From: Perkinsus chesapeaki ATCC PRA-425
Lineage: Eukaryota; Protista; Perkinsozoa
Assembly (NCBI GenBank): GCA_013115145.1
Contig: JAAPAO010000399.1
Span: 1 to 32,923, forward strand
Reading direction: 5' to 3'
Length of the DNA: 32,923 nucleotides
Positions 5,359 through 30,584 of this stretch are shown here, one piece after another (positions within the stretch are counted from its first letter, which is position 1; every line of letters starts with the position of its first letter). The notes beneath the pieces are model-generated. The model was given only the letters and a program-made list of their open reading frames with translations. It was not told where the DNA came from and ran no database searches. The translations under genes and the position numbers were made by a program.

Positions 5359-5544
5359 TTATATATTTAGTGTCAGAACTTCTGGCTCTACTCGCGTCAC
5401 TTTCTGTGCTACAGCGTTATACATTAGCTACGAGCTACATATAGGATATCCACGAGTCAGTGCACTGGCTTTGCGAGCATTACTCTATGTGCTCAAGTTT
5501 CTATGATTACTGCTCTTGTCGCGCTCCATTAAATTCGGGAAAAT

Positions 5545-5615
5545 GATATGTGTGAGGTTCGAACCGAGGTCGTTAATAAGACAATCAGTGCCCATAACTG
5601 CTACGCTAATCAGTC
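5545..5615 (-). mobile_element. Degenerate tRNA-derived (SINE-head-like) sequence, intergenic
   Basis: Minus strand GACTGATTAGCGTAGCAGTTATGGG...ACGACCTCGGTTCGAACCTC: A-box-like and B-box motifs at tRNA spacing, but acceptor and T stems do not pair. Shares TATGGG, ACGACC and GGTTCGAnCCT with the 17497-17570 copy. Confidence 0.55.
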
Positions 5616-15799: not shown

Positions 15800-18165
15800 T
15801 GTCGGCGTATTCAAGAGGATAGCTCACTTTTAAGGATCTGATTATGGCCCAGACCGGGCGGCGGCAAGAGCAAGCGGAACCGAGTGGCACGCTTGCCGTT
15901 CCGCTTACATAACTCACCACGAGAACTGAAAGGCGCTACCATTGTTTGCATCATCAAAGCACCAACGATAACTTACCGAGATACAGTCGATGCCTTCTTG
16001 AACGCTTTCTCACGTGAATCACCGGCAGCTGCGCTACTTAGTGTGGACTTGTGGGCCTCATTGCTATCTACGCAAAAGACAACAATCGCACTATCACGAC
16101 GAGAGCTCCTCACTTCGATGTAACGCTGATGCACGGTCGGTATTTTTGTGTCGATCTTCCGCTACTGGAGAGCGACTGTGGTAATGGTGGTGATGGCTGG
16201 GCGCATGATGATAATTAGCCAACCTGCCAAGGGTCGACGACGCAGCCCGCTCGAGTGAGTCATCCGAACTTACTCGAGCAAGCGAAAGTGAGACTCCAAA
16301 TGTGAGGGATGATGACGAATGTAAGAGATGACGCACGGTGGCACAGGGAGCTCACGACTGAAGGCCATGCCACCAACAATCTTAGTGGCTCCTCTGAGGA
16401 TTCTCTGCCTGTCACTTCGAGGCGTAATGTCAGTGTGAAAGCGCGTGGTCGAGGTCGCTAGCCCCATGTCCAAGACCGACATAAACCCGCCGATGTCTTG
16501 CGGCGGTGGCACTACGCGTCCCGCGCTGGCCTGCAGCTCTTCGGCTCGCTTGAGCTCCAGCAAACGGTCTATCTCATCATCAATTAAGGCCTCTACGGTC
16601 AAGTTTCGGTGATCGTCGTAGTGCCAGTCGTCGCGATTTCCCTCGCCGACAGCCTCCCAATAAGTGATGTCGCTATTCTCTTCATCGGAAACTGATGCTT
16701 CTTCTTCGGCTGGGACCGGGCGACTGGTCTCTGGATCGCTAAGATCAGCGAAATCGTCCTCGATCCCCTCGTCTATCACAAAGGAGTCTCTCGGCTCTTG
16801 TTTGACGAGTCGATTAGCGGCAGCAGCCGGCGGTTCTATCCGAACAGGAGACTTGTGCACAGGCCGCGAGCGCGGTCGATTCTTAGGGGTGGAGTCCCGA
16901 GCAGCCTTAGTAGAGGCCAGTGGCGCTTCCACAACGGGACGCAACTGTATGGCTTGCGACGCAGCTATGGCTGATTGAATCTGGTAAAACCGAGATACCC
17001 TTCCAGGCTCGCGCTCGAGCCCTACTGTTATTTTCCGGGCCGGTGGAGGCTCGTCAGAAATGCCAACTAAAACTGGTCGCTTCACTTTAATCCTCGCAGC
17101 TCGACCAATCCGCTCCCTCGGCGGTCTCTGCTGACTTGGACTCCTGTCAGCATTTCCAAGATCCTGCCTGCCTAACAAGAGCGAATTCACAATTCGATGG
17201 CCGTCGAAATTAGCAATACCCTGTCGGGCGGCGGCGGCGGCGGTGTTACAGGCTTTTGGGCTACTGGCCGGCTTGGGGCGCTCTGCCTCCGGCTCGTCCT
17301 CATTAACCGGGCGAGCGTGCTCAACAGGGCGGATTCTCGAGGAGGGAGGCCTAGAAATAGGTCAAGGTCATTTGCGGCGACCGACGCTGTCGTACGCTAA
17401 CTGTATCTTTCTCATAACTGCAACCTTCACAGACTTGGGCATTTTACCGTTCTGACTCCGCCGGCGATAGCGCAGCACTAACGCTCCCAGGGCAGTCTGA
17501 GAATAGTAATAATGCAGGGTGGAAGGATCGAACCTGGGTCGTCTTACGGCCAGAGTGATGACACCCATACCAACCAGCTCCACTGCAGACTCTCTTCGAA
17601 CTCCAGGTGGCGTCATCGGTTCATACGCGTAATCCCAGAATGATTCTGCCGCCTGTCTCGCTAAGGTCCTTACGTATTCGGGGTGCCGGTTGGAATCCTG
17701 GTCGGCCTAAACGATGTCGCTGCCAGGGATCGAACCTCCATCTGGGTCTACCGATCGGAGTAACCGTTCGAGCTGCTCGACAATCGCCAGAGTCGCATCA
17801 TCGTAATTCGCTTGTTCCTATTAGGGGAACTCTGTCATTCGCGACACGTTCAGAGTTTTACCGAGTTGCCCACTGAATCAACGACACTCTGCAGGATGTA
17901 CTGAATAATATCGTGTTCGCTCGCGGCACCAATTTGGGTAAAGTCGTCTGAGACGGAGTGGGCGGGCGGATTTGTGAAATGCCTTACGCTCTTTCTTCCG
18001 AAATAGGTCGTCAACAGCTACGCTAGTACAAGTGGATTCACCAAGCCTGATGCCGTGGCTGCTCCTGGCCCCACCGTAGCTCTGAGGAAGAAACTGATAG
18101 AAAAACCGGAAAATGTATAAAAATAACCGGACCAGGGGTTGTGGGGGGCTTAGGCCGGTATACAT
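15800..18165 (-). CDS. Multi-exon hypothetical low-complexity protein; exons 18165-18133, 18081-17988, 17947-17862, 17817-17752, 17706-17571, 17496-17448, 17350-17220, 17171-~16274, then uncertain 3' exons to ~15800
   Basis: Seven GT-AG introns (51, 40, 44, 45, 74, 97, 48 nt) keep one frame: MYTGLSPPQPL|SYGG..FRKKE|HDFTQ..VGNS|EQANYDD..LLRS|ADQDS..ELV|DCPG..SER|PPSS..ARQ|GRQDLG, joining the 306-aa ORF. Further GTAAGT donors at 16273 and near 15970. Confidence 0.7.
17497..17570 (-). other. tRNA-derived 74-nt spliceosomal intron
   Basis: TGGAGCTGGTTG|GTATGG (A-box/D-loop provides GT) ...ACGACCCAGGTTCGATCCTT (B-box) ...ATTATTACTATTCTCAG. Removal is required to keep the frame. Confidence 0.65.
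17707..17751 (-). other. tRNA-derived 45-nt spliceosomal intron
   Basis: CTCCGATCG|GTAGAC (D-loop-like) ...GGAGGTTCGATCCCTGGC (B-box)...GTTTAG. The retained intron ends in an in-frame TAG. Confidence 0.6.
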
Positions 18166-19163
18166 GTAACCTCCTCTCTCGTCAACATCAGGAATAGTAA
18201 TTGTCCAGATATTTCCTTCGTCGTCTGAAAGACACGTGTTGTGTCGAAACGGCGATGAGCCACTGCGAATCGATCAACCGTTTCAGATTCTTTCCGGGGT
18301 TGATTTCTCACACCTTCTGGGCTAAGTAAGCCTACCCTGCTAGAATTTGGTTCGAAATGGTATTTCCGCTTCAGCATATCCGAAAAATTCACAAGCGATT
18401 TTCGAATGAATCCCATTCCGAACTCAGACGCTTAGAAGGGGCCTCTTATAGGGGCGAGTCAATGGCGAGATAACAGTGACACTGTTACAGTGTTACGCGA
18501 TGGGGACAGTAGATTGTGCAATTGCAACACAATTACTGTCCCCATCGATGCGATATAATCCTTACCAGTAAAGGAAGCCGCTGAAGACATAACAACAATA
18601 CATACAAACAATACATACAACATTATAATACCATGAGATGACGAAGCGGCGCCGGGTGCCGTTGAAGACATTGCTAGAATAACTGAACGAAATGAGTAGC
18701 TCGCATTACACTGCTAAAATACACTAATGCGAGCCTTATGTGGTGGACCGATGAGGAGTCGTATTTAAGTAGTGTGAATGGATTGTTGAGCTCCAAGTTA
18801 ATGAGTGCTAAGGACGCAATTTCCTTCGTTCGCACAAGAGACGGAAGAAAATAAAGTTTGCGTTGAGGAAACTCAAGATTGCAAGATTGAATCTTGCTCC
18901 CGGTTTCCGCTCTTTGTAACCACGTCTACTCGATCGTGTGTATTGAATTAGAGACATTTGAATAAGATATTTTAAGGTTGATGCGTGCATTTTGTAGCAG
19001 ATTACTCTGTTATTGAATGGCCGGCCTTCGAAATTATGATTTCCACTTATCCCCACCGAGAGATTACTTTTTGCCGAGTAAGCCTGTGATAAGACCAGGA
19101 GACATTACCAGGAAAAGTAATATAAGCATTATACGCTTAATATACGTAGAGAACATGGTTAAT

Positions 19164-19306
19164 TTATATAGGTACTTTATATAGGTATCTTATATAGGTA
19201 TTTTATATAGGTATTTTAGATAGGTATCTTATATAGGTATTTTATATAGGTATTTTATATAGGTATTTTATATAGGTATTTTATATAGGTATTTTATATA
19301 GGTATT
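19164..19306 (+). repeat. 13-bp minisatellite, 11 copies
   Basis: Unit TTATATAGGTATT; variants in copies 1, 2 and 5; copies 6-11 identical. Confidence 0.97.
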
Positions 19307-20138
19307 TTGAGAGGAGTATTCTTGTTTGTTTCTTTTTATGTTGATTACAAGCCTTTAGAGGATAATTTCATACTTGGCTCTGAGCCGAACCGGCAGAGGT
19401 CTCCGACTACAGCCTCGTTAATTTTTATATGTCGTAACTGCTCTCTCAGGTGTCTCCCTTGGTGAGGTTGTGAGAATGAAAGAAGGTCATTTAGCTTCGG
19501 AAAAGAGGAGTCCGATGAAATGCTCAATAGGGTGCTGATTATCGTTCAGGTCATGAGCTTATGTCACAGCAAGACGCACTGTCGAGAGCCAGAAGCGAGC
19601 GGGCCGCGGCTTATCTGAAGGAGACTAATACTCAGTAGTGCAGCCGGGAAGGGGTCTATGGGAGGAGGGGGGAGGGGATGTAGAGTTCCGCACGGCGTAG
19701 ATCTCGCATTATTAAAGTAGAAGAGAATTTGCATAATGGAAAATTTAAAGATTGAGAAAGTATCCGTTCATATCACCTTGTGCGATGCATATAACCAGCA
19801 TAACTTGACTCTCTCGGCGGCCAACCTGAGAGCGGTCGTCCTTCGACAGTATGTGATCGTCCAGTGAATGTGATGGTAATCATTATAGTATCGACTGGTG
19901 GAAATAAAGTGTATTATTGCGAATATGCATTGGCCAAACGACAACCGCAACTCTTTGAGAGGTTTCCTGATTGAGGGGAGTCGGCTTTTCATCGGAGTAG
20001 TACGCCGGCCGAAATTGGCTTTCTTTAATGTCGCTCCGCAAATTTGTTGGAACTCTAGCATTGCTATCTGGCATTAATCTGCATTCTAGGGTGAGCGATA
20101 AGGGCCTCTGGTTGGTTCGTATTCATTGTTGTTCTCAG

Positions 20139-22620
20139 GCTTCATGAGCAAGCGGAGAAGGTCAATCGCCGAATAGAGGCGGTTGTGGCGGTGGAGCCGC
20201 GGCTTAGTGGTAAGAAAGTCTGCTGGTATTCGGAAGGTCGTGGGTTCAATTCCTGCCACTTTCATTTTATAGAGAATATGAAGCGTCTGGAGCGTCGTTG
20301 TGAGGAGCTTGGGCAAGAACTGCTGGCTGATAAGCATGAAACTGTCGAGGCCAGGCGAGACCTAACCGAGCTCCAGGCTGAGATCGAAGCGGTAAGAGGG
20401 AGGGCTAACGAGATATATATACATTTATAAAATATATTATATATTTCTCCTTGCGTATAAGAAGAGTATAGAACAATAATATTATCTTTGTAGTATTTTA
20501 TGTGTTATTACCACCTATCTGTGGTTAGATGTTTTTCGTTGTTTTGAAATGGTTAGTGCTAACCGTTAGTGATGGGCGTTATGATGATGCAGAGACGAGG
20601 AGCGGTCCTGGATTTATATTTTGTTCTTGTCTTTTTGTTCGGATATCGAATTGGTGTCTATATCGTCACTGGCATTTATAGGTTCCCACGCCATGGACTT
20701 AGCTGCTTCTTTTCGGTATAGGGCCCCACGCCATGGAATTTGAGACTTCTTTTCGGTATAGGGTCCTATCCTCTTCATAAGGAATACTTGCAGCAAAGCC
20801 ATTACGGAAACATCTCAACTTGTGAGTTGATATTTAATTAATAATGGCCACACAGTTATCATTAAAATGCCTTTCGAATGCGGATGTGCATTCCGTGTGT
20901 GGGAAGGGTCTATGATGTTAATCTGTGCTGGCTACTGGTGGCAGCTGAATAGTTAGGTGTTTTAGGAAGTAGCCACTAAGAAGGCCTTGGAACGTGAAGT
21001 GAGCAGTAAGGAATCGTTGAGGAGAAGGCTGATAGAGAAAGGTGGGGGGGGGAGTATCAAATTCAACTTGCAATTGTAGCGTAACCTATTTTCGTATATA
21101 TTTTGACAGTAGTTATTTTTGGTTCGATATTATGCTGATGATCATACGGGATAATTATGTGATTTCACGTTGTTGTAGATGCAATGGATGCCATAGGGTA
21201 TCTGATGGTTGTTGAGGTATCCGCTGTTCAGATGTGGCAGGCAGACGAGGTGACTTGGAGAGGAGGAAGAGTCAAGTTAGACATGAAAGAGCTAATGTTC
21301 ATCAAATTGATAGGAGAGCACAAGGCTTGGCAAAGTACCCTAGCTGGGGATCGAACCTGCGTTGGTAGACTGGGAGGAAAATGCCGGCAGTTTTTCATGA
21401 GTGAAGATTGATAAGTGTAGAGGGACGTTGGCGGCTGTGGAAATGCTGTGGGCGCCTGCGATTGTAGTCGATGGTGACGAATTTTGGGAAGTTCTGGCAA
21501 CGTGTAGACTCGGTAGAAGTGCCATTTCGAAATTGCTAAGATGGATTATTTGTGAAGTCAAATGGAATTTTCAGAACTGATGTGAATCTCTCAAGTCTAT
21601 CCACCACTTCAATGCGATCATGCCTGGAGAAAGCGAGGAAGGAATTCCCTTTCCTCCAGGTAAGGTTGTTGGTTCGATCCCCGGCGGGGGTATTTTAGTG
21701 TTTAGTCGCAGCTCGTTGAGCTAGATCTTGCATGGAAGCGGTTGCCAGAGGAGAGAGCGAAGATACTCGCTCAATCTCAGGAAATGTAATAGGTCAATGC
21801 GGCGGCGGTGGAATCTGTAGGGTCGTCGACGAGTCTTCCGAAAATATGCCTTCCAAGTGTGGAGAACTATTGTAGTAGATAGGCTCCTAGGGGGGCAAGA
21901 AGGGACGTTTGGGAATTTGTGATGCCTCTCTATCACATTCTGGTGGTAGCGCATGACTGGGGGCAATTTCGTGGTCGCCAGAGTGCGGAGAGACATGGTC
22001 TCTTTTTACCAATTTTTGGAGTTTCAGGTCTGCTGGAATAGATACCCCAGAATGCTCCTCCTCACCGATAAATGTAGCAGGAAGGACGGAGGGGATTGAA
22101 AATGCACTCAGAGGGGCTTGGTGAGATTAAGGGGACAGGGACACAATCCTGCCTGGATGGGGTTGACGAGGGCTTCCGCTCAATTTCGCAGTTTCGCCGA
22201 CTACTTGATGATGACTGTGAACCTATGGAATATCTTTGACAGTTGCCGACGCGGGGGGCTGAGGTTTGCTATGATTTCTCGGCATCAGCAATGCTCTCTT
22301 AACCGAGGCTAGCATGTCTCTCTTCGAGGATGCGTCGAATGAATACTGTATGCATGGATAATAATAATATTCTTTATTATTGTTGTTTTGTGGATGATCC
22401 ATCAGTTTGCCTCTCAATCTCCCCTTGAGGTTTCTTACTGGACTTCTTGACAGGTGCCGAATTAGTACTAAGCGCGAAGAGCTGGAGGAGTTGGTGGAGC
22501 TCGCGGGGGACAGCGATGATGATGATGAGGATGCTGATAGCTCGGAACTCAATGCACAGGATGTAGAAAGGCAAAAGATGCCACCTTGTGCATGCGTGCA
22601 AATTAGGGGTCCCATGTTAT
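20139..22620 (+). CDS. Probable multi-exon coiled-coil/acidic protein, partial model (exons 20139-20209, 20273-20391, 20966-21041, 21179-?, 21575-21659, 21706-~21786, 22454-~22590)
   Basis: AG/GT-bounded segments translate to LHEQAEKVNRRIEAVV, ENMKRLERRCEELGQELL..LTELQAEIEA, EVATKKALEREVSSKESLRRRLIEK, SMRSCLEKARKEFPFLQ, SQLVELDLAWKRLPEERAKIL, REELEELVELAGDSDDDDED. Phases match for the first four; it is uncertain that all belong to one gene. Confidence 0.45.
20192..20272 (+). other. Near-complete degenerate tRNA-like cloverleaf; its 3' part forms a 63-nt intron (20210-20272)
   Basis: GGCTTAGTG|GTAAGA A-box, anticodon-like loop CTGGTAT, variable loop AGGTC, paired T-arm GTGGG-TTCAATT-CCTGC, then CACTTTCATTTTATAG acceptor. 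Confidence 0.6.
20677..20766 (+). repeat. 40-bp tandem repeat, ~2.2 copies
   Basis: TATAGGKYCCCACGCCATGGA...CTTCTTTTCGG starting at 20677 and 20717, partial copy at 20757. Confidence 0.9.
21332..21360 (-). mobile_element. tRNA T-arm/3'-end family copy, minus strand
   Basis: GCAGGTTCGATCCCCAGCTAGGGTACTTT; 22/26 identical to the plus-strand copy at 21671-21696. Confidence 0.55.
21660..21705 (+). other. 46-nt intron made of a tRNA variable loop, T-arm and 3' end
   Basis: CAG|GTAAGGTTGTTGGTTCGATCCCCGGCGGGGGTATTTTAGTGTTTAG|; in-frame TAG if retained; flanking exons join in phase 0 (EFPFLQ|SQLVEL). Confidence 0.55.
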
Positions 22621-23705
22621 AGTGGGAGACGTCTTTGCAGTACTGCGTCCACCCGCGAGGGAGATGGTGGAGTCGCTGTGATGCGGGAAATGTGTTTTGT
22701 AATGAAGCTCGACGGAAGAATTTGACGAAAACGTTGAAGTTAATTTCCACATAATAAATTGCTGAGCAAGGTGACGTGTATAAAACTTATGTACATTATG
22801 GCGAGCATGGTAGAGAATATAATTAGATTATTTCTCATTTGCAGGGACAGTTTTTGTGTTACTCAATTAAGGGACGGAGTTGGGCAAGCTCATCCGGCCA
22901 TTGGGGAATTAGGTTTCGGAGGGTATTAAGGAGTTCCTGAGAGCTGATTATAGATATAATTCACACCGAGCGTTGGTCCGCTTTTCATGATAAGCGCATT
23001 TATCGTTGGAGATGTAATCATTATTTTATGTAGTCAAGTAGCGCCTCTGCCTAGCCGAAGGTCTAGGATGAAGACGAACGACGTAGTCGAGCATCTTATT
23101 ATCATCATTTGGGTTCGTAGGAGTGAAAAATATCGTAAGTTGTTTTCAGTGGGGCTTTTGCATAATGACAACGAGTGCTGCGGGAGTCTCGCAAGTGGCA
23201 AGGTCGAGCAGCGGCGGGAAGCTGCCGAGAATCTCACCATCGGGGAGCGCTATCAACTCTCCGGTAGTCCAGTCCCCTAGAAAGTCGGATGAGGTGATAA
23301 AATGTGGGGGAATAGTAAATATGTGGAGGAAAATGTGGCAGTTGGTGTCTGGGGAAGGAACGAGACATTTCCGTCCCTGTTTCCTATTACAGCCCTCCCC
23401 AGTGAAATAGAATATTCCGTATTATTACGATTTCTCGTTGATTAATAAACGTAAGAGTCTAAAACTTTGTATCGTGGTACTAGAACACATAGTGAGTTGG
23501 CACGTCTGAATCGATCAACCGTTTCATGCCTAGGGGCAAAGATACCGGCGCGCGAGATTATCCGCGCGCGCAGAACTGCCTCACTGAAATAGAATACTTT
23601 ATACTAGTCGACGGTACTCGCCATACTGGAAAACTCAATACTTCGTAATCTGATACTAGGCACTATGAGAGACACACTTTAACATGCTACACGGAAATCT
23701 GAAAC

Positions 23706-24560
23706 TTAATAGTCAACTACCTTCCCTTTCCTCTCGAGAACCGCACACAGTTATTTGCGCATGGACTCTGTGCACTTACCCACAAATCCATCTTCCATTT
23801 CCTCCCAAGCCTTGAAGATAGCAACACGCAGCAGGTCTGCCGATACATACGGTGGGTTTCCAGGCCGATAAACCATCATAGCTTGCTTGCCCCATACATT
23901 TTCGATGGGGTTCAGGTCGGGACTTAATGAGGGCCAGGTGCAAGTAGGCACATCGTGGTCCTCCAACCATTTCTTGGTGCTTGCCGAGGCATGGCAAGGG
24001 GCGTTATCTTGTTGGAATATCATGCCAGGCTCCAAAACGGGAAGGAGGTGGTCAGCTAGGAGCTCCTGATACTTGGCAGAGTTGAGCCGAGTATCGACCA
24101 CTGCCAAGGAGAGCTTCTTGCTGCCACAGATGGCACCCCAGATCATTACTGAACCACCACCAAAGCTTCGTTTCGAACTCACGACAGCTGCAGACTTCGG
24201 AAGCTTCCAGTAATGATACACGCCATCTGGACCATCCAGATTGAACTTTTTTCGTCGGTGAAGACGAAGGTCTTGAAGTCTGTTCCGTCAATGAGATACT
24301 TATTCGCCCACGCTACTCTAGCAGCCTTATGAGTGGCCTTCAAGACCGGCGCCCCTCTAATGGAAGCCCACTCTGCTGCCTCTGACTCAAGAAACCGTCT
24401 TACCGTCTCCCTACCGACAACCAAACCTAGTTCCCTGACCACTCCCGCACAGCTAAGTCCCGGGTCCTGCACCAAAGAACGCACAACACGCCTTTTGTGA
24501 GCTGCAGAAAGCCTCGGCTTGGCCCTGTGGGAAGGTGGGAACTTCCCATCTTCCCAACTG
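23706..24560 (-). mobile_element. Tc1/mariner (Tc3-like, DD34E) transposase pseudogene, 5'-truncated
   Basis: VFTDEK(K)FNLDGPDG..FGGGSVMIWGAI..FQQDNAPCH..WPSLSPDLNPIENVW with 34 residues between D and E. One A is missing in the A-run at 24247-24252 (frameshift); premature TAA at 23751-23753 precedes LCAVLERKGKVVDY* (true stop 23706-23708). First HTH and TIR pair not found. Confidence 0.93.
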
Positions 24561-24653
24561 CTGGAATCAACCTTGATGATTGATATGTTGAATTCATTTT
24601 TCTTCGCTGTCTGTTTCCGCTCATCTTTGCACGGTGAAGTGAGTCTGTGGTAG

Positions 24654-27600
24654 AGGAGGAGCGGTTGAGCTTCGAATGGATGTTCAGGCGGCCCCCGATG
24701 AGGTGTCACCGTTGAGTAAGGTTAACCAGGAGGGATGCTCGGGCGGTAATAAGAAAGTGCCCAACTCGGGGGCTGGCAATAAGGACCAGGTAAAGGGGGG
24801 CATTTGGGGGAAATATGGTATGAAATGTATTGGAAATTGGAGACAAAACTTTGTGTTGAAATATGCAATTGAATTTTATATTTGAGGTAGCTTTCTCTTG
24901 TGGATTCCGGTGGTCAGAAAACAAGTCCTATCCTTACCGGGAGAAAAAAAATGGATAAAGTTCGGATTAGGCACCAGATGGGCCCTTGGGAAGTTGTCGC
25001 TGACTCTCCTCAGAGCAGCGCGGCTAGAGTTGCCCAGGCGAGGGCGGCAGCGGCGCGAACGAGCCGATCGAAAGTTAGGCAACAGCGAGGCGTCAGTGTG
25101 GGGCAAGGAGCACAAAATGGTAATAGGGTTTGGGGAGTATAGATGATTTATTGGATTCAGAATTGGCGGGAACAGTTGGACGAACGCGAACGCTGAGTCC
25201 GCAGGAGGAGGCGAACGAGGGAGGAAAGGGGACGCGGAGATGGTCCGACATGACGAGCGATGAGGACTCTGAGCCGGCTACGTCGAAACTGCGCAAGTTC
25301 GATCCGCCGCGGCGGTCTTTCTCGAGCATTGTTTCTGGAGGGCTGGTGAAGAAGGGCAGTGAGGGAGCGGTCAGTAAGGCTGCTGCTGTTGTGAAGGGGG
25401 GAAGTCCTGTGGGAAGGGCAATGAATGGAGGGAGTAAAACAAAGGGCAGGCAAGGTAATAAAGGAGGGGGTGTTGTAGAAGTATTGAGCATTGCTATATG
25501 ACAAATGGTTTGAGGAGGATTATCGAAGGCCATTTGGTGTAAAAGTACGATCGATCTCCGAGACCGACGGACAGTTATAGGACTTGGCGACTGCGAATGG
25601 TTGAATGGATTATATTGCACTTGGTTGAAAGTTTGTGAATTTCTAGCGAGGGGCATGTTCCTCGCTTCTTTGAAGATGAATAACTGGCCCGATGAGCAGG
25701 TCACTAAGTCTGAGTAAGCTTGAACTCTTTCTTACTCGGAAGGATTAAGAGCCGTCGGGGCTGGGCGTAAAGAGATAGACCCGCGGTATTGATTTCATTC
25801 ACTTTCTCAGCTAAATCGTGCCGAACCTCAAAGTCTGGCGAAGTTCCGAGTGCGCCGGTGTCGCCACGGGAATCATTGAATGCATCCTTACCTACAATTG
25901 GGATGGTGAAGGCTTGTCCGTGCGAACAGCAAGCTAAAATCAGCAGAGGTGATAGAGGGGTAGGGTTATAAAGATAGTCAGGTAGTTAGGTGGGAAAGGG
26001 AGCGAGCCGAGCCCGACGGCATCGCCAGCGGCTCGCCCGAGCTCGGTTGGCGGGGGAGCAGCGGCGGGGTGTGGCAGCAGTCCTAAGGGAAATAGAGGAA
26101 AGTAATGCTGCGGGTGGGGGAGAGGATACGTGGTTTGGTGAGGGATGAAAAAAATTTCGGAGACTCCTGTGGGCTTCTGTGTCTGGAACATTTTTGAATT
26201 TGAGGCGATGATGTACGTTGGATATTTTTTAATTGGGTTATTGGGAACAGTTGAGTGAGGCGCCGCTGGAATGGAATGAGTTTCTGTTGCGGCGGCAGAG
26301 ACATGACGGATGGGCTGCAAGTTGCAAGCCTTTACGCCCCGAACAAAAGCTGGAGTTCATTTTTCGCGGACAAATCTCATTATTACTCCGTGGTGATACA
26401 AAGATGGCACTCAGAATCTCGCTTCAGCAATCTCGAGTAACGCAGTTTGATGATGCTGGAAGTCTCCCTTTGATAAGCGTTGTTCAGGGCTAGTGGTGTG
26501 GCTGCTACTGCTGCTGCCCAAGGTGGTTCGGCGTTACCTAGCAAGAAGACGACTGCGGTGGCAAAAGGCTCCTCTGCCACAACCACGACGACGTCCACGA
26601 GCGTTGGGGTCAGGAAAGGTGGGGAGGGGAGGACAAGTCCGAGAGGAAGGATGCGGGGGGAGAAGCTGGTCCGGAATGAGATGGAAACAGTTCCTGAGGA
26701 GGGCGAAGTGGATTACGGTGCGGAGAGCATGGAGACGGCACATTGGGCTACGGTAATAATTTTGTGGCGCGTGAAACATCTCTGCGATGGCATTTTCCAA
26801 GGTCCATAATGTCTGCGCATTTCCCTGGTATTACTGTTGCTTAGATGCCTCCAGCTGGCCAGTTCCACCCGCTGCCTGGCTTTTATCCGCCCGGAGCAGT
26901 CCCCCCGATGATGATGTTTCCGGCGCCGGCAGGGTATCCAGCTCCTCCTGGGCCCTATACAGGGATACATATGATGCCTCCTCCACAGGGAGGATTTGGG
27001 CCACTGATGGGTAAGTGGTGGGGTAGGAAGGCGAAGGAGTTGGGGGAAATTTGGTAGAATTCGTCGGGGTACTGTTGATATGATTCATATTTGATCGGGG
27101 AGTATCATATAGAGTGTAGTGCTTTAATATCATTGCTGTCTTCAACGATATAGTAGCAATTGGTATGGAGTAAAGATAAAGGCGCTCTCGAGAGCCAGGA
27201 GCGAGTGGGGCTATTGATTATCATAATAAGAAGTATGCATGTCGAGCAGGCAGTTTTGGGAAGATACTCGTTACTGAAGTTTCACAGAAAACCTTTATTG
27301 TTAAAGCGTCTTGATTTCGCTTCAGTAGTTGAGTGGGGTTCCGCGAATAGGGGAAAAGCTGAGGGCTGTTTGTCAGAATTTGATGGACATTTTTTATCGC
27401 TATTCATATGGTGCCATTTTGAGCGCATCCGTGGATCAGGTAGCTTGCCACCGTTTGAGCACGTGAACAACGGCCCTGAAGCATCGGAGGAGAAATGTGG
27501 GGGGAAGACGACGAAGAAGAAGGGAAGTGGCAGCAAGGGAGGAGGAGGGTCGCAGGCTAAGCAGACGAAGTCGCCGAGGGTTAACCAGGCTGGATGCGCC

Positions 27601-28326
27601 GCTGCCAACCCTACAGGGGGGCAGCAGTATCAACTACCTATGTGAGTTGAAGAGGGGCCACATATAGTCCCTATGATGCGTCCGAATTAGTAACATATAT
27701 TATATCACCTCCGCCTTACTACTGCTCTCTTAATGATTGGGTGGGACTTTCCTACTTTGAGGGCGCACTGACTCTCGAATGAGTGATGATGGTTAATAAT
27801 AGTAATATTGTTCATTATTATGGTTCTCCATTGTATTCCTAGCACGCATGCGCATCCTCTTATCGATGTACTCAGGTACGGTCATATCCGTCATCACCCC
27901 ACCGCCACAATCGTTTACACCACCTCTCCCATACCTCAAGACACAACTAGTATAATACTGGTAGGTCTCAGGTTCGATTCCCAGCAACGGTATTTTATCC
28001 CGAAATTCATATGATCTATTCTGAGACTGCACTTGGTTTCATTGCTTTGCCTATCTCGCGAAAGTCTATACCGGGTTTTGGGTTTTGAAAACCCGAAACC
28101 CTTCTAGAAGTTCATGGAGAACCAACGTGTGCATTCCCTTGTCGTAGGTGCCCATGTCCAACCCCCATCAACAGGGGGCTGGTCGGCCTGCTGGTATCCC
28201 CATTATGCCACTGGCATACCCGCCACCGATGCCGGCTCAATTCGACACATCTTACTTTGATGGAGGTGACTACTCACCTCCGAGCCCGCCAATCACTCAT
28301 CCTCCTAGCGGCCCTCAGAGTCTGAG
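24654..28326 (+). CDS. Multi-exon Gly/Ser/Pro-rich disordered protein, partial model (exons 24654-24789, ~24900-25119, 25161-25454, 26488-26752, 26845-27010, 27440-27641, ?-27960, 28148-28326)
   Basis: Strong donors (GTAAAG, GTAATA x3, GTAAGT, GTGAGT, GTAGGT, GTGAGG). Phase-consistent joins such as GAQN|ELAGT (41-nt intron), HWAT|MPPAG, GPLM|GSLPP. Peptides RWSDMTSDEDSEP and PPAGQFHPLPGFYPPG. Ends and some internal exons are unresolved. Confidence 0.55.
27961..27998 (+). other. tRNA T-arm family copy directly behind a GT donor
   Basis: CTG|GTAGGTCTCAGGTTCGATTCCCAGCAACGGTATTTTAT; 22/27 identical to 21671-21697 with identical spacing. Confidence 0.55.
28073..28101. repeat. T4G3-based hairpin (14-bp arms, 1 mismatch, 1-nt centre)
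   Basis: GGGTTTTGGGTTTT-G-AAAACCCGAAACCC followed by TTCTAGAA. Confidence 0.85.
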
Positions 28327-30584
28327 GTGAGGGCGAGTTTTGTGGCGCGCGGGAGGTTTGGTTGTAGGTCTGTTCGTACGCATTCTGTTGCATCAGAAGC
28401 CAGCTTTGATGGCACCCGACCGGTCACAGTGTGCGTTGACAGGAACGCTTTTAAGTCCTGGTTCGACACCGACGTAAGCTTCACCTGTTTGGGCGGTTTT
28501 TTGGTATTCGGTTGTTTTGGAAAAATTTTATGAATTTCATCGCTTCAACGACACTTATACGCTTGCTAATATTTTAGACAGTCTGAAAATTTCTTTCTTC
28601 AACATGACGAGACGAATGTAGTGAGGTTCTCAGTGCTTTTACGCGTAGCGTAAGTATATCGTTTCGTTCCTTAGCGAGAAAGATAATACTATGAGCAAGT
28701 GGATCTCGAGGATCCTTTGCCATGAAGATTTGGCGAGAATCCAATAATAGAGATCTTAGATAGATCTTAGATAAAGATAGATTTCTTCAATAATAGAGAT
28801 AATTCCCCCATTGCAGGTTCCAGAGTTCCAGCAGCTCCGCGTTAAGAGATATCGAACGATAGACTCCTTCGTGCACTGGATGATGAAGTACTGCAAGAGG
28901 AAGTAGGAAAACTATTACCAAACGTTTGGTGATGATGACGCTTCCGTGTCGGTTCGGAACCGAGATGCGTCTTTATTCCGGAGGCCAAATAGGAAATATA
29001 CGGCGTTGTGAATCTTTTTATTCTTGGCATTATTTAGATTCGTATCAATTAAGGCCGTTTGTTAGTTTCATGAGTAGCCTTCCTCTCTGCCGAACAACCA
29101 GTAGAGCTCCACCGCTCCGCTCGAATTTAATCATTTGGAGTCTATTTCGAAGAATTCAACTTCGTTATAATGTGAATTACATCTGAGTTGGCTATCCGTA
29201 TCGTAATTTAGTGTCAACTCAGTTGGCCATCGGTGTGGTCTTCAGGAGTATCTATCACGGTCTGTATATCCTCGTGAGAGTCACCGACGCTGAGAAGTTG
29301 CTGGAAGTTCTGACGAGGCTGATACCCACTTGGCACAGTGTTGTCATGGGCATATATGTGTAAGAGGGGGGGCATTGAGCTCTACGCACTAGAAGATACG
29401 CAACCGCTTTGTTACTATTAGATTTATGTAATTATTAGGGCAAAACTGTGAGCATTATTCTTCCCAACTGCTGCTGCTTCATCACTCTCTGGGCAAGCTC
29501 ATTACCTTCGTACTTCTTTCTTTCTTTTTCTTCTTCTTTAGCAGCCTGTCCCCTTCGATCGGGGTGTTGATTATAGTCAGTATCGCGGGGGCAGCGGGTC
29601 GAGGTTGTTGTTATAACCTCCTGAGCTTTGGCTAGTTCCGAGTATCCATTTTTTCATGAGTGACAGGCGACAAGGCGTATCTCATTGATTTACTACTTGT
29701 TATAATCTTGACGTAGCAAATGAACCATAAATACAATATAGCGGTATTATAATGTCGTAATGTGGTGGATTGATCCAATTCAGGCAGCGTACCTTATCTG
29801 TTAATGAGGTGACATTTATTTGTCATCGCGGAAATATGAAGTATTCCCAACTTGATGATCTGTCGTCCTTCCGCTTATATACCTTTTCTGTTTTTTCGGG
29901 AATTATTTTGCTTTGCCTGATTCCTGAGAACGAAGATATCATTATATAATACTTTATAATATGGCTTAGTTTACGGTGTAGCCATTGCAGCTTTCCCGAG
30001 CTCATCGCTGAAGCTGGGATTCAAGTCCTTTGTTGGAATGAGCATGTCAGATACGAGCAGTCGCGAGGAAAGGTGGGGAAGCCTCTACAGAGGAGAGTTG
30101 CTCAGCATTTACCCATCCGACATGATCCAAGGGTCACAATAGTCGACACACTCGCAGTAGGATAATCAGACCGACAATTTCTGAGTTGAGTTCAGGAAAC
30201 GTGCCGACTTGCTATTGCGTCCGGAGCAGGTGTAGATGCAGCATTGAACATCTCACCATCGCCGTTGAAGGCGAAAGAAGATGAGATGAAGAAAGAGATT
30301 ATAAGTTGATTACGGTTTACCTCTTGGTTGCTTCCATTATTGGAATCGCCGGTCTAGAAGCCGCCGCCTGAGTCACATGAAGTTTGTCTGAATACTTGAA
30401 TTAAACAAGCCTGCAGGCCGGAATGGGTGTTGGGTTTTTGGGGGGAGATACAGGGAGGAATTAGTCGGTTTTATTCGGCTGGGAGTCGTAGTGGAACAAC
30501 AGGTGTGTCGGTGTTAACCTTCTCGGGAGCGGTCTCTGAACTTGAACTAGTCATATTAACAGACAATGCACTTGTTGACACTTG

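What the first reader, a model, noticed from the sequence alone, without database searches (positions are those of the whole stretch)
17497..27998. Candidate system: a tRNA-derived element family that forms spliceosomal introns
Seen: seven tRNA-like segments carry a B-box/T-arm (GGTTCRA). Five (17497-17570, 17707-17751, 20210-20272, 21660-21705, 27961-) lie sense-strand inside predicted introns of three different genes. In the four with a defined acceptor, the B-box starts 29-37 nt before the intron end. In three, the GT donor coincides with the D-loop GGTA, leaving the tRNA 5' end in the exon, and the post-tRNA T-rich tail serves as the pyrimidine tract. Established: SINEs carry tRNA-derived Pol III A/B boxes, and transposons (Introners) can create introns, including in dinoflagellates. 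Inference: a tRNA-derived SINE or retro-tRNA is pre-adapted to be spliced out and has seeded introns here. I do not know of this being described in Perkinsozoa, but could not search.
Basis: partly seen in the sequence, partly recalled or inferred. Interest (0 to 1): 0.85.

Follow-up and report, generated by a model that had tools for sequence, protein, structure and literature searches.

The report
Old tRNA relics inside Perkinsus introns
Six introns of three neighbouring genes of the shellfish parasite Perkinsus chesapeaki carry the worn-down tail of a tRNA gene, and its 11-base promoter motif (the B box) has survived in the same introns of sister species whose neutral DNA is scrambled, so these are old, selectively kept pieces and not fresh intron-making jumping elements.

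Summary
The window is a whole P. chesapeaki contig. The tRNA-like pieces are real. The strict B box GGTTCRANYCC occurs 6 times against 0.29 expected. A profile built from the pieces also finds the 3' ends of genuine Perkinsus tRNA genes.

Six of 37 introns in three genes carry a relic, five in sense and one antisense. Each lies 10-33 nt from the 5' splice site.

- The 74-nt intron 17570-17497 is really a 51-nt intron (17547-17497). Its supposed tRNA 5' half is conserved coding sequence.
- The "D-loop donor" holds only for 20210-20272.

Five relic introns are shared, relic included, with P. olseni, and two of these also with P. marinus. Four-fold sites are near saturation (36-40% identical, chance 26%). 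B-box identity is 78%, flanks 36-43%, other intron interiors 23-30%. The T-stem is eroded, which points to selection on the DNA motif, most plausibly as a TFIIIC docking site. This was not tested.

The relic at 27961 is P. chesapeaki-specific, yet its intron exists in both sister species. Relic and intron origin are therefore uncoupled there.

I found no multi-copy SINE family and no target-site duplication. No RNA-seq could be laid.

The scan has reported the same phenomenon on many other contigs of this genome.

The parts
15826..18671 (-). Gene 1 (transmembrane protein, P0014, 663 aa, 12 introns); host of relics A and B
   Evidence: Deposited protein P0014 mapped exactly onto the window. The P. 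olseni orthologue P0005 also has 12 introns.
17707..17751 (-). Intron B, 45 nt. Sense tRNA 3' relic, B box GGTTCGATCCC at 17736-17726
   Evidence: The orthologous introns hold GGTTCGAATCC (P. marinus) and a decayed GGTTCATCTGT (P. olseni).
17497..17547 (-). Intron A, 51 nt (corrected boundary). Sense relic, B box GGTTCGATCCT at 17534-17524
   Evidence: The annotation and the orthologue protein read ...GMGVITLA|TALGAL.... The relic is shared with P. olseni (GGTTCGATCCC) and P. marinus (GGTTCTATTCC).
19017..22681 (+). Gene 2 (coiled-coil protein, annotated 307 aa, 10 introns in my model); host of relics C, F and D
   Evidence: Gene span and product length. Exons from alignments with P. olseni. 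The model gives an open frame of the annotated length.
20193..20264 (+). Relic C: whole decayed tRNA straddling exon 4 and intron 4 (intron 20210-20272, 63 nt). The donor GT lies in the D-loop GTGGTA
   Evidence: Rfam tRNA, model positions 1-71, 18.1 bits, below the gathering score of 29. P. olseni has the same intron with GGTTCAAATAA, but no Rfam match there.
21335..21574 (+). Intron 7 of gene 2 (240 nt). Antisense relic F at its 5' end (21330-21364 on the minus strand, B box 21357-21347)
   Evidence: The P. olseni intron is 44 nt and keeps the antisense AGTTCGATCCC (10 of 11 identical).
21660..21705 (+). Intron D, 46 nt. Sense relic, B box GGTTCGATCCC at 21671-21681, then ...GGGTA + TTTT
   Evidence: The P. 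olseni intron (67 nt) keeps GGTTCGATCCG.
24576..30306 (+). Gene 3 (Pro-rich protein P0009, 745 aa, 15 introns); host of relic E
27961..28147 (+). Intron E, 187 nt. Sense relic at its 5' end (27963-27998, B box 27971-27981). The relic is P. chesapeaki-specific
   Evidence: The annotation gives exons ...TTSIIL | VPMSNPH.... The upstream exon is 97% identical in protein in both sister species. Their introns at this place have no B box.

Best explanation
These are decayed tRNA genes, mostly only their last third: variable loop, T arm with the B box, 3' acceptor strand, discriminator A and a T run. They come from several different tRNA species.

They sit at the 5' ends of short spliceosomal introns of ordinary Perkinsus genes. 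In sense copies the relic fills the space between the donor, which lies where the tRNA's variable loop would be (GTAGGTC in several copies), and the T-rich tail plus AG.

Most were already in place before P. chesapeaki, P. olseni and P. marinus diverged. Since then everything in these introns has been randomised except the B-box core (G52 G53 T54 T55 C56 . A58).

Shown: the relics, their intron positions, their age, and the excess conservation of the B box.

Inferred: the B box is kept by selection as a DNA site, most plausibly a docking site for the Pol III factor TFIIIC without productive tRNA synthesis (an ETC-like site). Its use as part of the splice signals is a by-product of where the relic sits.

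Some turnover continues. Relic E is specific to P. chesapeaki and relic G to P. marinus.
For: - Motif excess: 6 strict B boxes against 0.29 expected.
- Location: all six relics lie in the first 40 nt of introns, P about 1e-6 for the 14.5-kb stretch.
- tRNA origin: profile R1 finds real tRNA 3' ends at 14-19 bits and relics at 16-26 bits. C scores as a full tRNA at 18.1 bits.
- Age: A and B are present at the same intron in three species; C, D and F in two.
- Neutral divergence: four-fold sites are 36-40% identical, chance 26%. Non-relic intron interiors are 23-30% identical.
- B box: 60/77 (78%) identical between P. chesapeaki and the others, against 83/210 in the 15-nt flanks; Fisher P = 6e-9.
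- Core: GTTC is kept in all 7 orthologous copies, which were not chosen by motif.
- DNA-level rather than RNA-level: outer T-stem pairs form in 20/42 cases against chance 0.375, and in 12/12 in real tRNAs. The antisense copy F is as well conserved as the sense ones, 10/11. An intergenic relic at 5500-5610 is also kept in place in three species.
- Precedent: the B box GGTTCGANTCC binds TFIIIC, mutating its internal C abolishes binding, and B-box-only ETC sites are conserved among yeasts (PMC3395662).
Against: - No binding data exist for Perkinsus.
- Known ETC sites lie mostly between genes, not in introns (PMC3395662).
- The B box of relic B has decayed in P. olseni, GGTTCATCTGT.
- Two P. olseni isolates differ at key B-box positions in C (C56 to G) and D (G52 to A). 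That is 2 changes in 33 nt, the same as the local background of about 6%. Constraint is not visible at that scale, though the sample is very small.
- Sense copies outnumber antisense 6 to 1. A purely DNA-level role does not predict this.
- The splice junctions rest on annotation and cross-species frame conservation, not on reads.
Confidence: 0.5

Rival explanations
1. A mobile tRNA-derived element (a SINE or a retro-copied tRNA piece) carries its own donor-like and acceptor-like ends, and created these introns on insertion, as an Introner would.
For: - In sense copies the relic lies between the donor (at the variable-loop position, GTAGGT in E and in P. olseni A) and a T run plus AG, and is about as long as a minimal Perkinsus intron of 40-50 nt.
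- Lineage-specific copies exist: E in P. chesapeaki and G in a P. marinus intron.
- D, E and F agree at 24/28 and 22/26 positions.
- The T run starts right after the discriminator A, unlike the trailers of real tRNA genes.
Against: - Five of six relic introns are shared across species at near-saturated divergence.
- The intron with E exists without a relic in two species.
- Outside the B box, orthologues and non-orthologues are equally alike, 10.8 against 10.0-10.6 of 25.
- The copies derive from different tRNAs.
- No target-site duplication, no further copies of E or G, and no family was found in 111 kb.
Confidence: 0.17
2. RNA-level role. In the pre-mRNA the GGUUCGAUCC stretch mimics a tRNA T loop and is bound or modified, for example by a T-loop pseudouridine synthase or another T-arm binder. 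Or it acts as an intronic splicing enhancer for tiny introns.
For: - Sense bias of 6 to 1.
- Fixed closeness to the 5' splice site, 10-15 nt in four of five sense copies.
Against: - The T-stem that such enzymes need is eroded, 20/42 outer pairs.
- The antisense copy F and an intergenic relic are conserved too.
- 31 of 37 introns, including many of 39-51 nt, have no B box, so it is not needed for splicing.
Confidence: 0.13
3. No function. The relics are junk that looks conserved because of slow local decay, chance, or repeated patching by gene conversion from real tRNA genes.
For: - Decay of relic B in P. olseni.
- B-box polymorphisms between P. olseni isolates at the background rate.
- Lineage-specific gain or loss.
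Against: - Neighbouring intron bases are at chance identity while the B box is at 78%.
- Gene conversion from tRNA genes would also restore the T-stem and acceptor strand, and these are eroded.
Confidence: 0.1

Closest known systems
ETC (extra TFIIIC) sites of yeasts and mammals, and the B-box boundary repeats of fission yeast
   Same: An isolated B box matching GGTTCGANTCC, with no working tRNA around it, conserved between species (PMC3395662).
   Different: Known ETC sites lie mainly between divergent genes. These sit inside short spliceosomal introns next to the donor, are visibly leftovers of tRNA genes, and occur in about one intron in six here. TFIIIC binding is untested.
tRNA-derived SINEs
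   Same: tRNA origin, a Pol III B box, a T-rich end, and a location in introns. From the paper titles listed in the searches, TFIIIC can bind SINE and Alu B boxes (PMC3744447, PMC7014570).
   Different: No family consensus, no tRNA-unrelated body, no A box in five of six copies, several source tRNAs, no target-site duplications, and mostly older than the genus radiation.
Introners (intron-generating transposons, e.g. PMC9860276; dinoflagellate case in bioRxiv 10.1101/2020.10.14.339549)
   Same: A short element whose ends coincide with splice sites.
   Different: Introners are recognised as multi-copy, near-identical families with presence/absence differences. Here the copies are unalike and the introns are shared. 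PMC9860276 mentions neither tRNA, SINE nor Perkinsus.
Dada DNA transposons that target tRNA genes in P. marinus (PMC3706591)
   Same: They link tRNA genes and mobile DNA in the same genus.
   Different: Dada elements are 4.7-11 kb transposons that insert into tRNA genes. Nothing of that kind flanks these relics.

Membership tests
Functional tRNA gene | Cloverleaf recognised by tRNA finders or covariance model above threshold | tested here: not met
   ARAGORN finds 0 genes. Rfam at gathering scores finds 0. The best match is C at 18.1 bits against a gathering score of 29. A gives none.
Functional tRNA gene | Paired T-stem and acceptor stem | tested here: not met
   Outer T-stem pairs form in 20/42 cases in relics and 12/12 in real Perkinsus tRNAs.
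tRNA-derived SINE | Multi-copy family with a shared consensus beyond tRNA-universal positions | tested here: not met
   Identity outside the B box is 10-11 of 25 for orthologues and non-orthologues alike. No further copies were found in 111 kb.
tRNA-derived SINE | A box plus B box, a tRNA-unrelated body and a tail, flanked by target-site duplications | tested here: not met
   Only C keeps a D-loop/A-box region. The others start 10-15 nt before the B box. No flanking duplications were seen.
Introner | Insertion creates the intron: intron presence or absence tracks element presence between related genomes | tested here: not met
   Five relic introns are shared with their relics. Intron E is present in P. 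olseni and P. marinus without the relic.
ETC-like B-box site | B-box consensus with the critical C56, without a working tRNA | tested here: met
   Six copies match GGTTCRANYCC with at most one mismatch. GTTC is invariant in 14 aligned copies.
ETC-like B-box site | Conservation of the B box above the neutral rate | tested here: met
   78% against 36-43% in the flanks and 36-40% at four-fold sites. Within P. olseni there is no visible constraint: 2 changes in 33 nt, a small sample.
ETC-like B-box site | TFIIIC occupancy without Pol III | not testable with these tools
   Needs ChIP-seq or CUT&Tag in Perkinsus.

The most novel reading that the evidence does not exclude
In Perkinsozoa the last third of a tRNA gene is a ready-made intron cassette: a variable loop GTAGGT as donor, and a T run plus AG as acceptor. 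Pieces of many different tRNA genes have repeatedly been captured into genes or into existing introns, and this still goes on (relics E and G). After capture the B box is retained by selection because TFIIIC bound inside genes does something useful, such as organising chromatin or pacing Pol II at tiny introns. That would be a route of intron birth or renewal and a Pol III-Pol II link not described elsewhere.
Probability: 0.15. Interest if true: 0.85.

Novelty: new variant of a known kind. Interest (0 to 1): 0.6.

Why it matters
If intronic B boxes are bound by TFIIIC, Perkinsus would have very many TFIIIC sites placed inside protein-coding genes. That would be an unusual use of the Pol III machinery in a parasite of commercial shellfish.

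It would also give a concrete, testable example of non-coding intron sequence kept by selection across deep divergence.

It bears on how introns arise. The tRNA tail fits between donor and acceptor of a minimal intron. However, in this window the data show old, maintained relics and one relic gained or lost in an existing intron. They do not show intron creation.

I found no paper linking Perkinsus with B boxes or TFIIIC, and none on tRNA-derived spliceosomal introns.

Tried and rejected
- RNA evidence. The look-up of sequencing runs found only one small 454 metatranscriptome holding 8% of the words, plus the likely source DNA run.
- A blind enumeration of GT-AG exon chains for gene 2 gave only degenerate solutions and was dropped. 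I replaced it with a conservation-guided model.
- My impression that the P. olseni copy of C looks more tRNA-like than the P. chesapeaki copy was not borne out: no Rfam match at E up to 10.
- Gene 2 could not be found in the P. marinus locus, even with a permissive tblastx. C, D and F are therefore compared in two species only.
- Neither relic G of P. marinus nor relic E belongs to a repeat family. Only an unrelated 60-nt element earlier in G's intron is repeated, and E matches only F.
- A role of the B box as a general splicing signal was rejected, because 31 of 37 introns lack it.
Full report
WHAT THE WINDOW IS

The window is the whole 32,923-bp contig JAAPAO010000399.1 of Perkinsus chesapeaki. 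The finding covers three annotated genes:
- Gene 1: a transmembrane protein, P0014, 663 aa, minus strand, 18671-15826.
- Gene 2: a coiled-coil protein, 307 aa, plus strand, 19017-22681.
- Gene 3: a Pro-rich protein, P0009, 745 aa, plus strand, 24576-30306.

I mapped P0014 and P0009 back onto the DNA codon by codon. This recovers the deposited exon structure. For gene 2 I had no protein record, so I built the model from alignments with P. olseni. It gives an open frame, and with two final exons it reaches exactly the annotated length. Together the three genes have 37 introns.

GGTTCRA occurs 18 times against 7.6 expected. The strict B box GGTTCRANYCC occurs 6 times against 0.29 expected, and no shuffle reaches 6.

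Five of the six strict hits are intronic pieces. The sixth, at 2945, reads through as coding sequence. A further intronic piece (17534-17524) has one mismatch.

So there are six tRNA-like pieces in the stated range, not seven:
- A: intron 17547-17497.
- B: intron 17751-17707.
- C: 20193-20264, spanning exon 4 and intron 20210-20272.
- F: antisense, at the 5' end of intron 21335-21574.
- D: intron 21660-21705.
- E: 5' end of intron 27961-28147.

The other GGTTCGA hits in the range (18349, 21121) have no tRNA-like continuation.

None of the six is a working tRNA. ARAGORN and Rfam at their normal thresholds find nothing.

Their tRNA origin is nevertheless clear:
- C gives a full-length Rfam tRNA alignment at 18.1 bits, below the gathering score.
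- A sequence profile (R1) built from 14 aligned copies picks up the 3' ends of genuine tRNA-Gly, Val and Leu genes in the P. olseni loci at 14-19 bits. The relics themselves score 16-26 bits.
- Ten of 14 copies keep an A at the discriminator position, and the T run often starts right after it.

All five sense copies are indeed inside introns of three genes. The distances from the B box to the intron end are 37, 29, 29 and 34 nt, as stated.

The intron drawn at 17570-17497 is wrong. The P. olseni orthologue P0005 reads ...ELVGMGVIIFATALGAMVL..., and the P. chesapeaki record reads ...ELVGMGVITLATALGALVL.... The intron is therefore the in-frame 51-nt stretch 17547-17497, with donor GTAAGA. The supposed tRNA 5' half is the conserved coding sequence of a membrane helix, and Rfam sees no tRNA there.

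The next intron downstream is 17395-17351 (45 nt), which also differs from the reading that follows from the 74-nt version.

The idea that the donor is the D-loop GGTA holds only for C, where it is conserved in P. olseni. In A, B, D and E the donor lies 10-15 nt before the B box, at the place of the tRNA's variable loop. The real tRNA-Val of P. olseni reads GTAGGTC at that place, just before its T arm. Relic E and the P. olseni copy of A begin with exactly GTAGGTC.

AGE OF THE RELICS

I fetched the syntenic loci of P. olseni (L002 and L004, two isolates that are 91-98% identical) and of P. marinus (L003). Gene order is collinear.

- A and B sit in the same introns in all three species.
- C, D and F sit in the same introns in P. 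olseni. Gene 2 could not be found in the P. marinus locus.

Neutral divergence is close to saturation:
- Four-fold degenerate sites in the best conserved exons are 38-40% identical (P. chesapeaki against P. olseni) and 36% (against P. marinus). Chance is 26%.
- Interiors of non-relic orthologous introns are 23-30% identical, which is random.

Against that background:
- The 11 B-box positions are 60/77 = 78% identical between P. chesapeaki and the other species.
- The 15 nt on either side are 36% and 43% identical; Fisher P = 6e-9.
- The GTTC core is intact in all seven orthologous copies, which were located by position and not by motif.
- Outside the box, orthologous copies are no more alike (10.8 of 25) than unrelated copies (10.0-10.6 of 25).

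So only the B box has been held.

WHAT KIND OF CONSTRAINT?

The T-stem outside the box is eroded: 20 of 42 outer pairs form against 37.5% by chance, while real tRNAs form all of them. An RNA T-arm is therefore not what is kept.

The antisense copy F is conserved as well as the sense ones (10/11).

A further, roughly full-length relic lies between two genes at 5500-5610 on the minus strand. It is held in place in all three species, with its D-loop and B-box regions recognisable.

These three points favour a site read on the DNA. The B box is the binding site of TFIIIC, and B-box-only 'extra TFIIIC' sites conserved between species are known from yeasts and mammals (PMC3395662). This is the most economical reading, but it is an inference. 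No binding data exist.

CAVEATS

- Relic B has lost its B box in P. olseni.
- The two P. olseni isolates differ at C56 of relic C and at G52 of relic D. That is 2 changes in 33 nt, equal to the local background of about 6%. The sample is too small to say more.
- Sense copies outnumber antisense 6 to 1, which a DNA site alone does not predict. The bias may reflect origin: only sense copies offer a donor and a T tract.

IS IT AN INTRON-MAKING ELEMENT?

The evidence here is against a recent or active one.
- Five of six relic introns are old.
- Relic E is absent from P. olseni and P. marinus, yet both have an intron at exactly that place, after an exon that is 97% identical in protein. Here the relic was gained by, or lost from, an existing intron.
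- P. marinus has a private relic (G, L003 17833) in a gene 3 intron. The orthologous introns in the other two species have none.
- The copies descend from different tRNAs. A resembles the tRNA-Leu tail at 18/25 positions in P. marinus, and E resembles the tRNA-Val tail at 16/25.
- There is no shared non-tRNA body and no target-site duplication. Apart from the 28-nt likeness of E to F (24/28) and of F to D (22/26), there is no repeat family in the 111 kb held.

An ancient origin of some introns from captured tRNA tails remains possible, and the fit of the tail to a minimal intron is striking. These genes have no outgroup orthologues with which to test it.

POSITION AND INTRON SIZE

All six relics lie within the first 40 nt of their introns (P about 1e-6). 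Four are in introns of 45-63 nt.

Where the P. chesapeaki intron is long (F 240 nt, E 187 nt), the relic is still at the 5' end. For F, the P. olseni intron is minimal (44 nt). The extra length in P. chesapeaki is therefore later filling.

Six of 37 introns carry a relic, about one in six.

RELATION TO EARLIER WORK OF THIS SCAN AND TO THE LITERATURE

The scan's notes show that the same phenomenon has been reported and followed up on many other contigs of this genome, with the same conclusion of conserved B boxes and possible TFIIIC sites. I treated these notes as leads and re-derived everything above on this contig.

New here:
- the corrected intron A;
- the two lineage-specific relics in shared introns;
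- the B-box differences between P. olseni isolates;
- the intergenic relic.

In the searchable literature I found nothing on B boxes or TFIIIC in Perkinsus, and nothing on tRNA-derived spliceosomal introns. The large Introner survey mentions neither tRNA, SINE nor Perkinsus.

VERDICT

- In the interpretation, the tRNA origin is right. A SINE family and intron seeding are not supported.
- The best reading is a set of old tRNA-gene relics whose B box is under selection, probably as a TFIIIC site.
- Splicing itself rests on annotation and on conserved reading frames, because no reads could be laid.

Noticed in passing
window 5500-5610 (minus strand); L002 15650-15760; L003 2320-2430; L004 4040-4150: A roughly full-length decayed tRNA lies between two genes. 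It has a D-loop-like TAGCGGTTA region and a B box (GGTTCGAACCT in P. chesapeaki). It is held at the same place in P. olseni and P. marinus. R1 scores it 13.8-16.3 bits, and Rfam gives no tRNA match. This shows that conserved relics are not confined to introns.
   Followed up: partly
window 23751-24709 (minus strand): Tc1/mariner-type DDE transposase remnant, annotated as a 131-aa DDE_3 gene at 23751-24146. It sits in a stretch of the window (about 23300-25010) that has no match in the syntenic P. olseni locus.
   Followed up: no
window 21332-21357 and 21671-21696: Relics F (antisense) and D (sense) form a 26-nt inverted repeat, 85% complementary, that brackets most of intron 7 and exon 8 of gene 2. 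In the pre-mRNA they could pair across that exon. The pairing is much weaker in P. olseni.
   Followed up: no
window 19117-19449, 19635-20138, 20392-20965, 21042-21231, 21335-21574: Introns of gene 2 that are 44-45 nt in P. olseni are 190-574 nt in P. chesapeaki. They are filled with AT-rich sequence, including a 13-nt tandem repeat (19160-19310) and a 40-nt duplication (20677-20756).
   Followed up: partly
L004 21017-25020: P. olseni carries a tandem array of real tRNA genes (Val-AAC, Leu-CAA, Gly-TCC, initiator-like Met-CAT), repeated about five times. None of their trailers starts with a T run, unlike the relics. A single tRNA-Gly(CCC) lies beside gene 1 in both P. olseni loci, and ARAGORN finds no tRNA anywhere in the P. 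chesapeaki contig.
   Followed up: partly
L004 10001-15050: The P. olseni record P0012 (880 aa) fuses the orthologues of gene 2 and gene 3 into one gene model and skips the exon that corresponds to window 21232-21334. This is probably an annotation error.
   Followed up: no
L003 17713-17773 and at least 15 other places in L003: A short element of about 35-60 nt is repeated in both orientations through the much-expanded introns of the P. marinus locus. It is unrelated to the tRNA relics.
   Followed up: no
window 28460-28470 and L003 15005-15015: B-box look-alikes inside conserved exons (...SWFDTDV, ...KFDPP...). They arise from Phe-Asp codons and are coding coincidences, not relics.
   Followed up: yes
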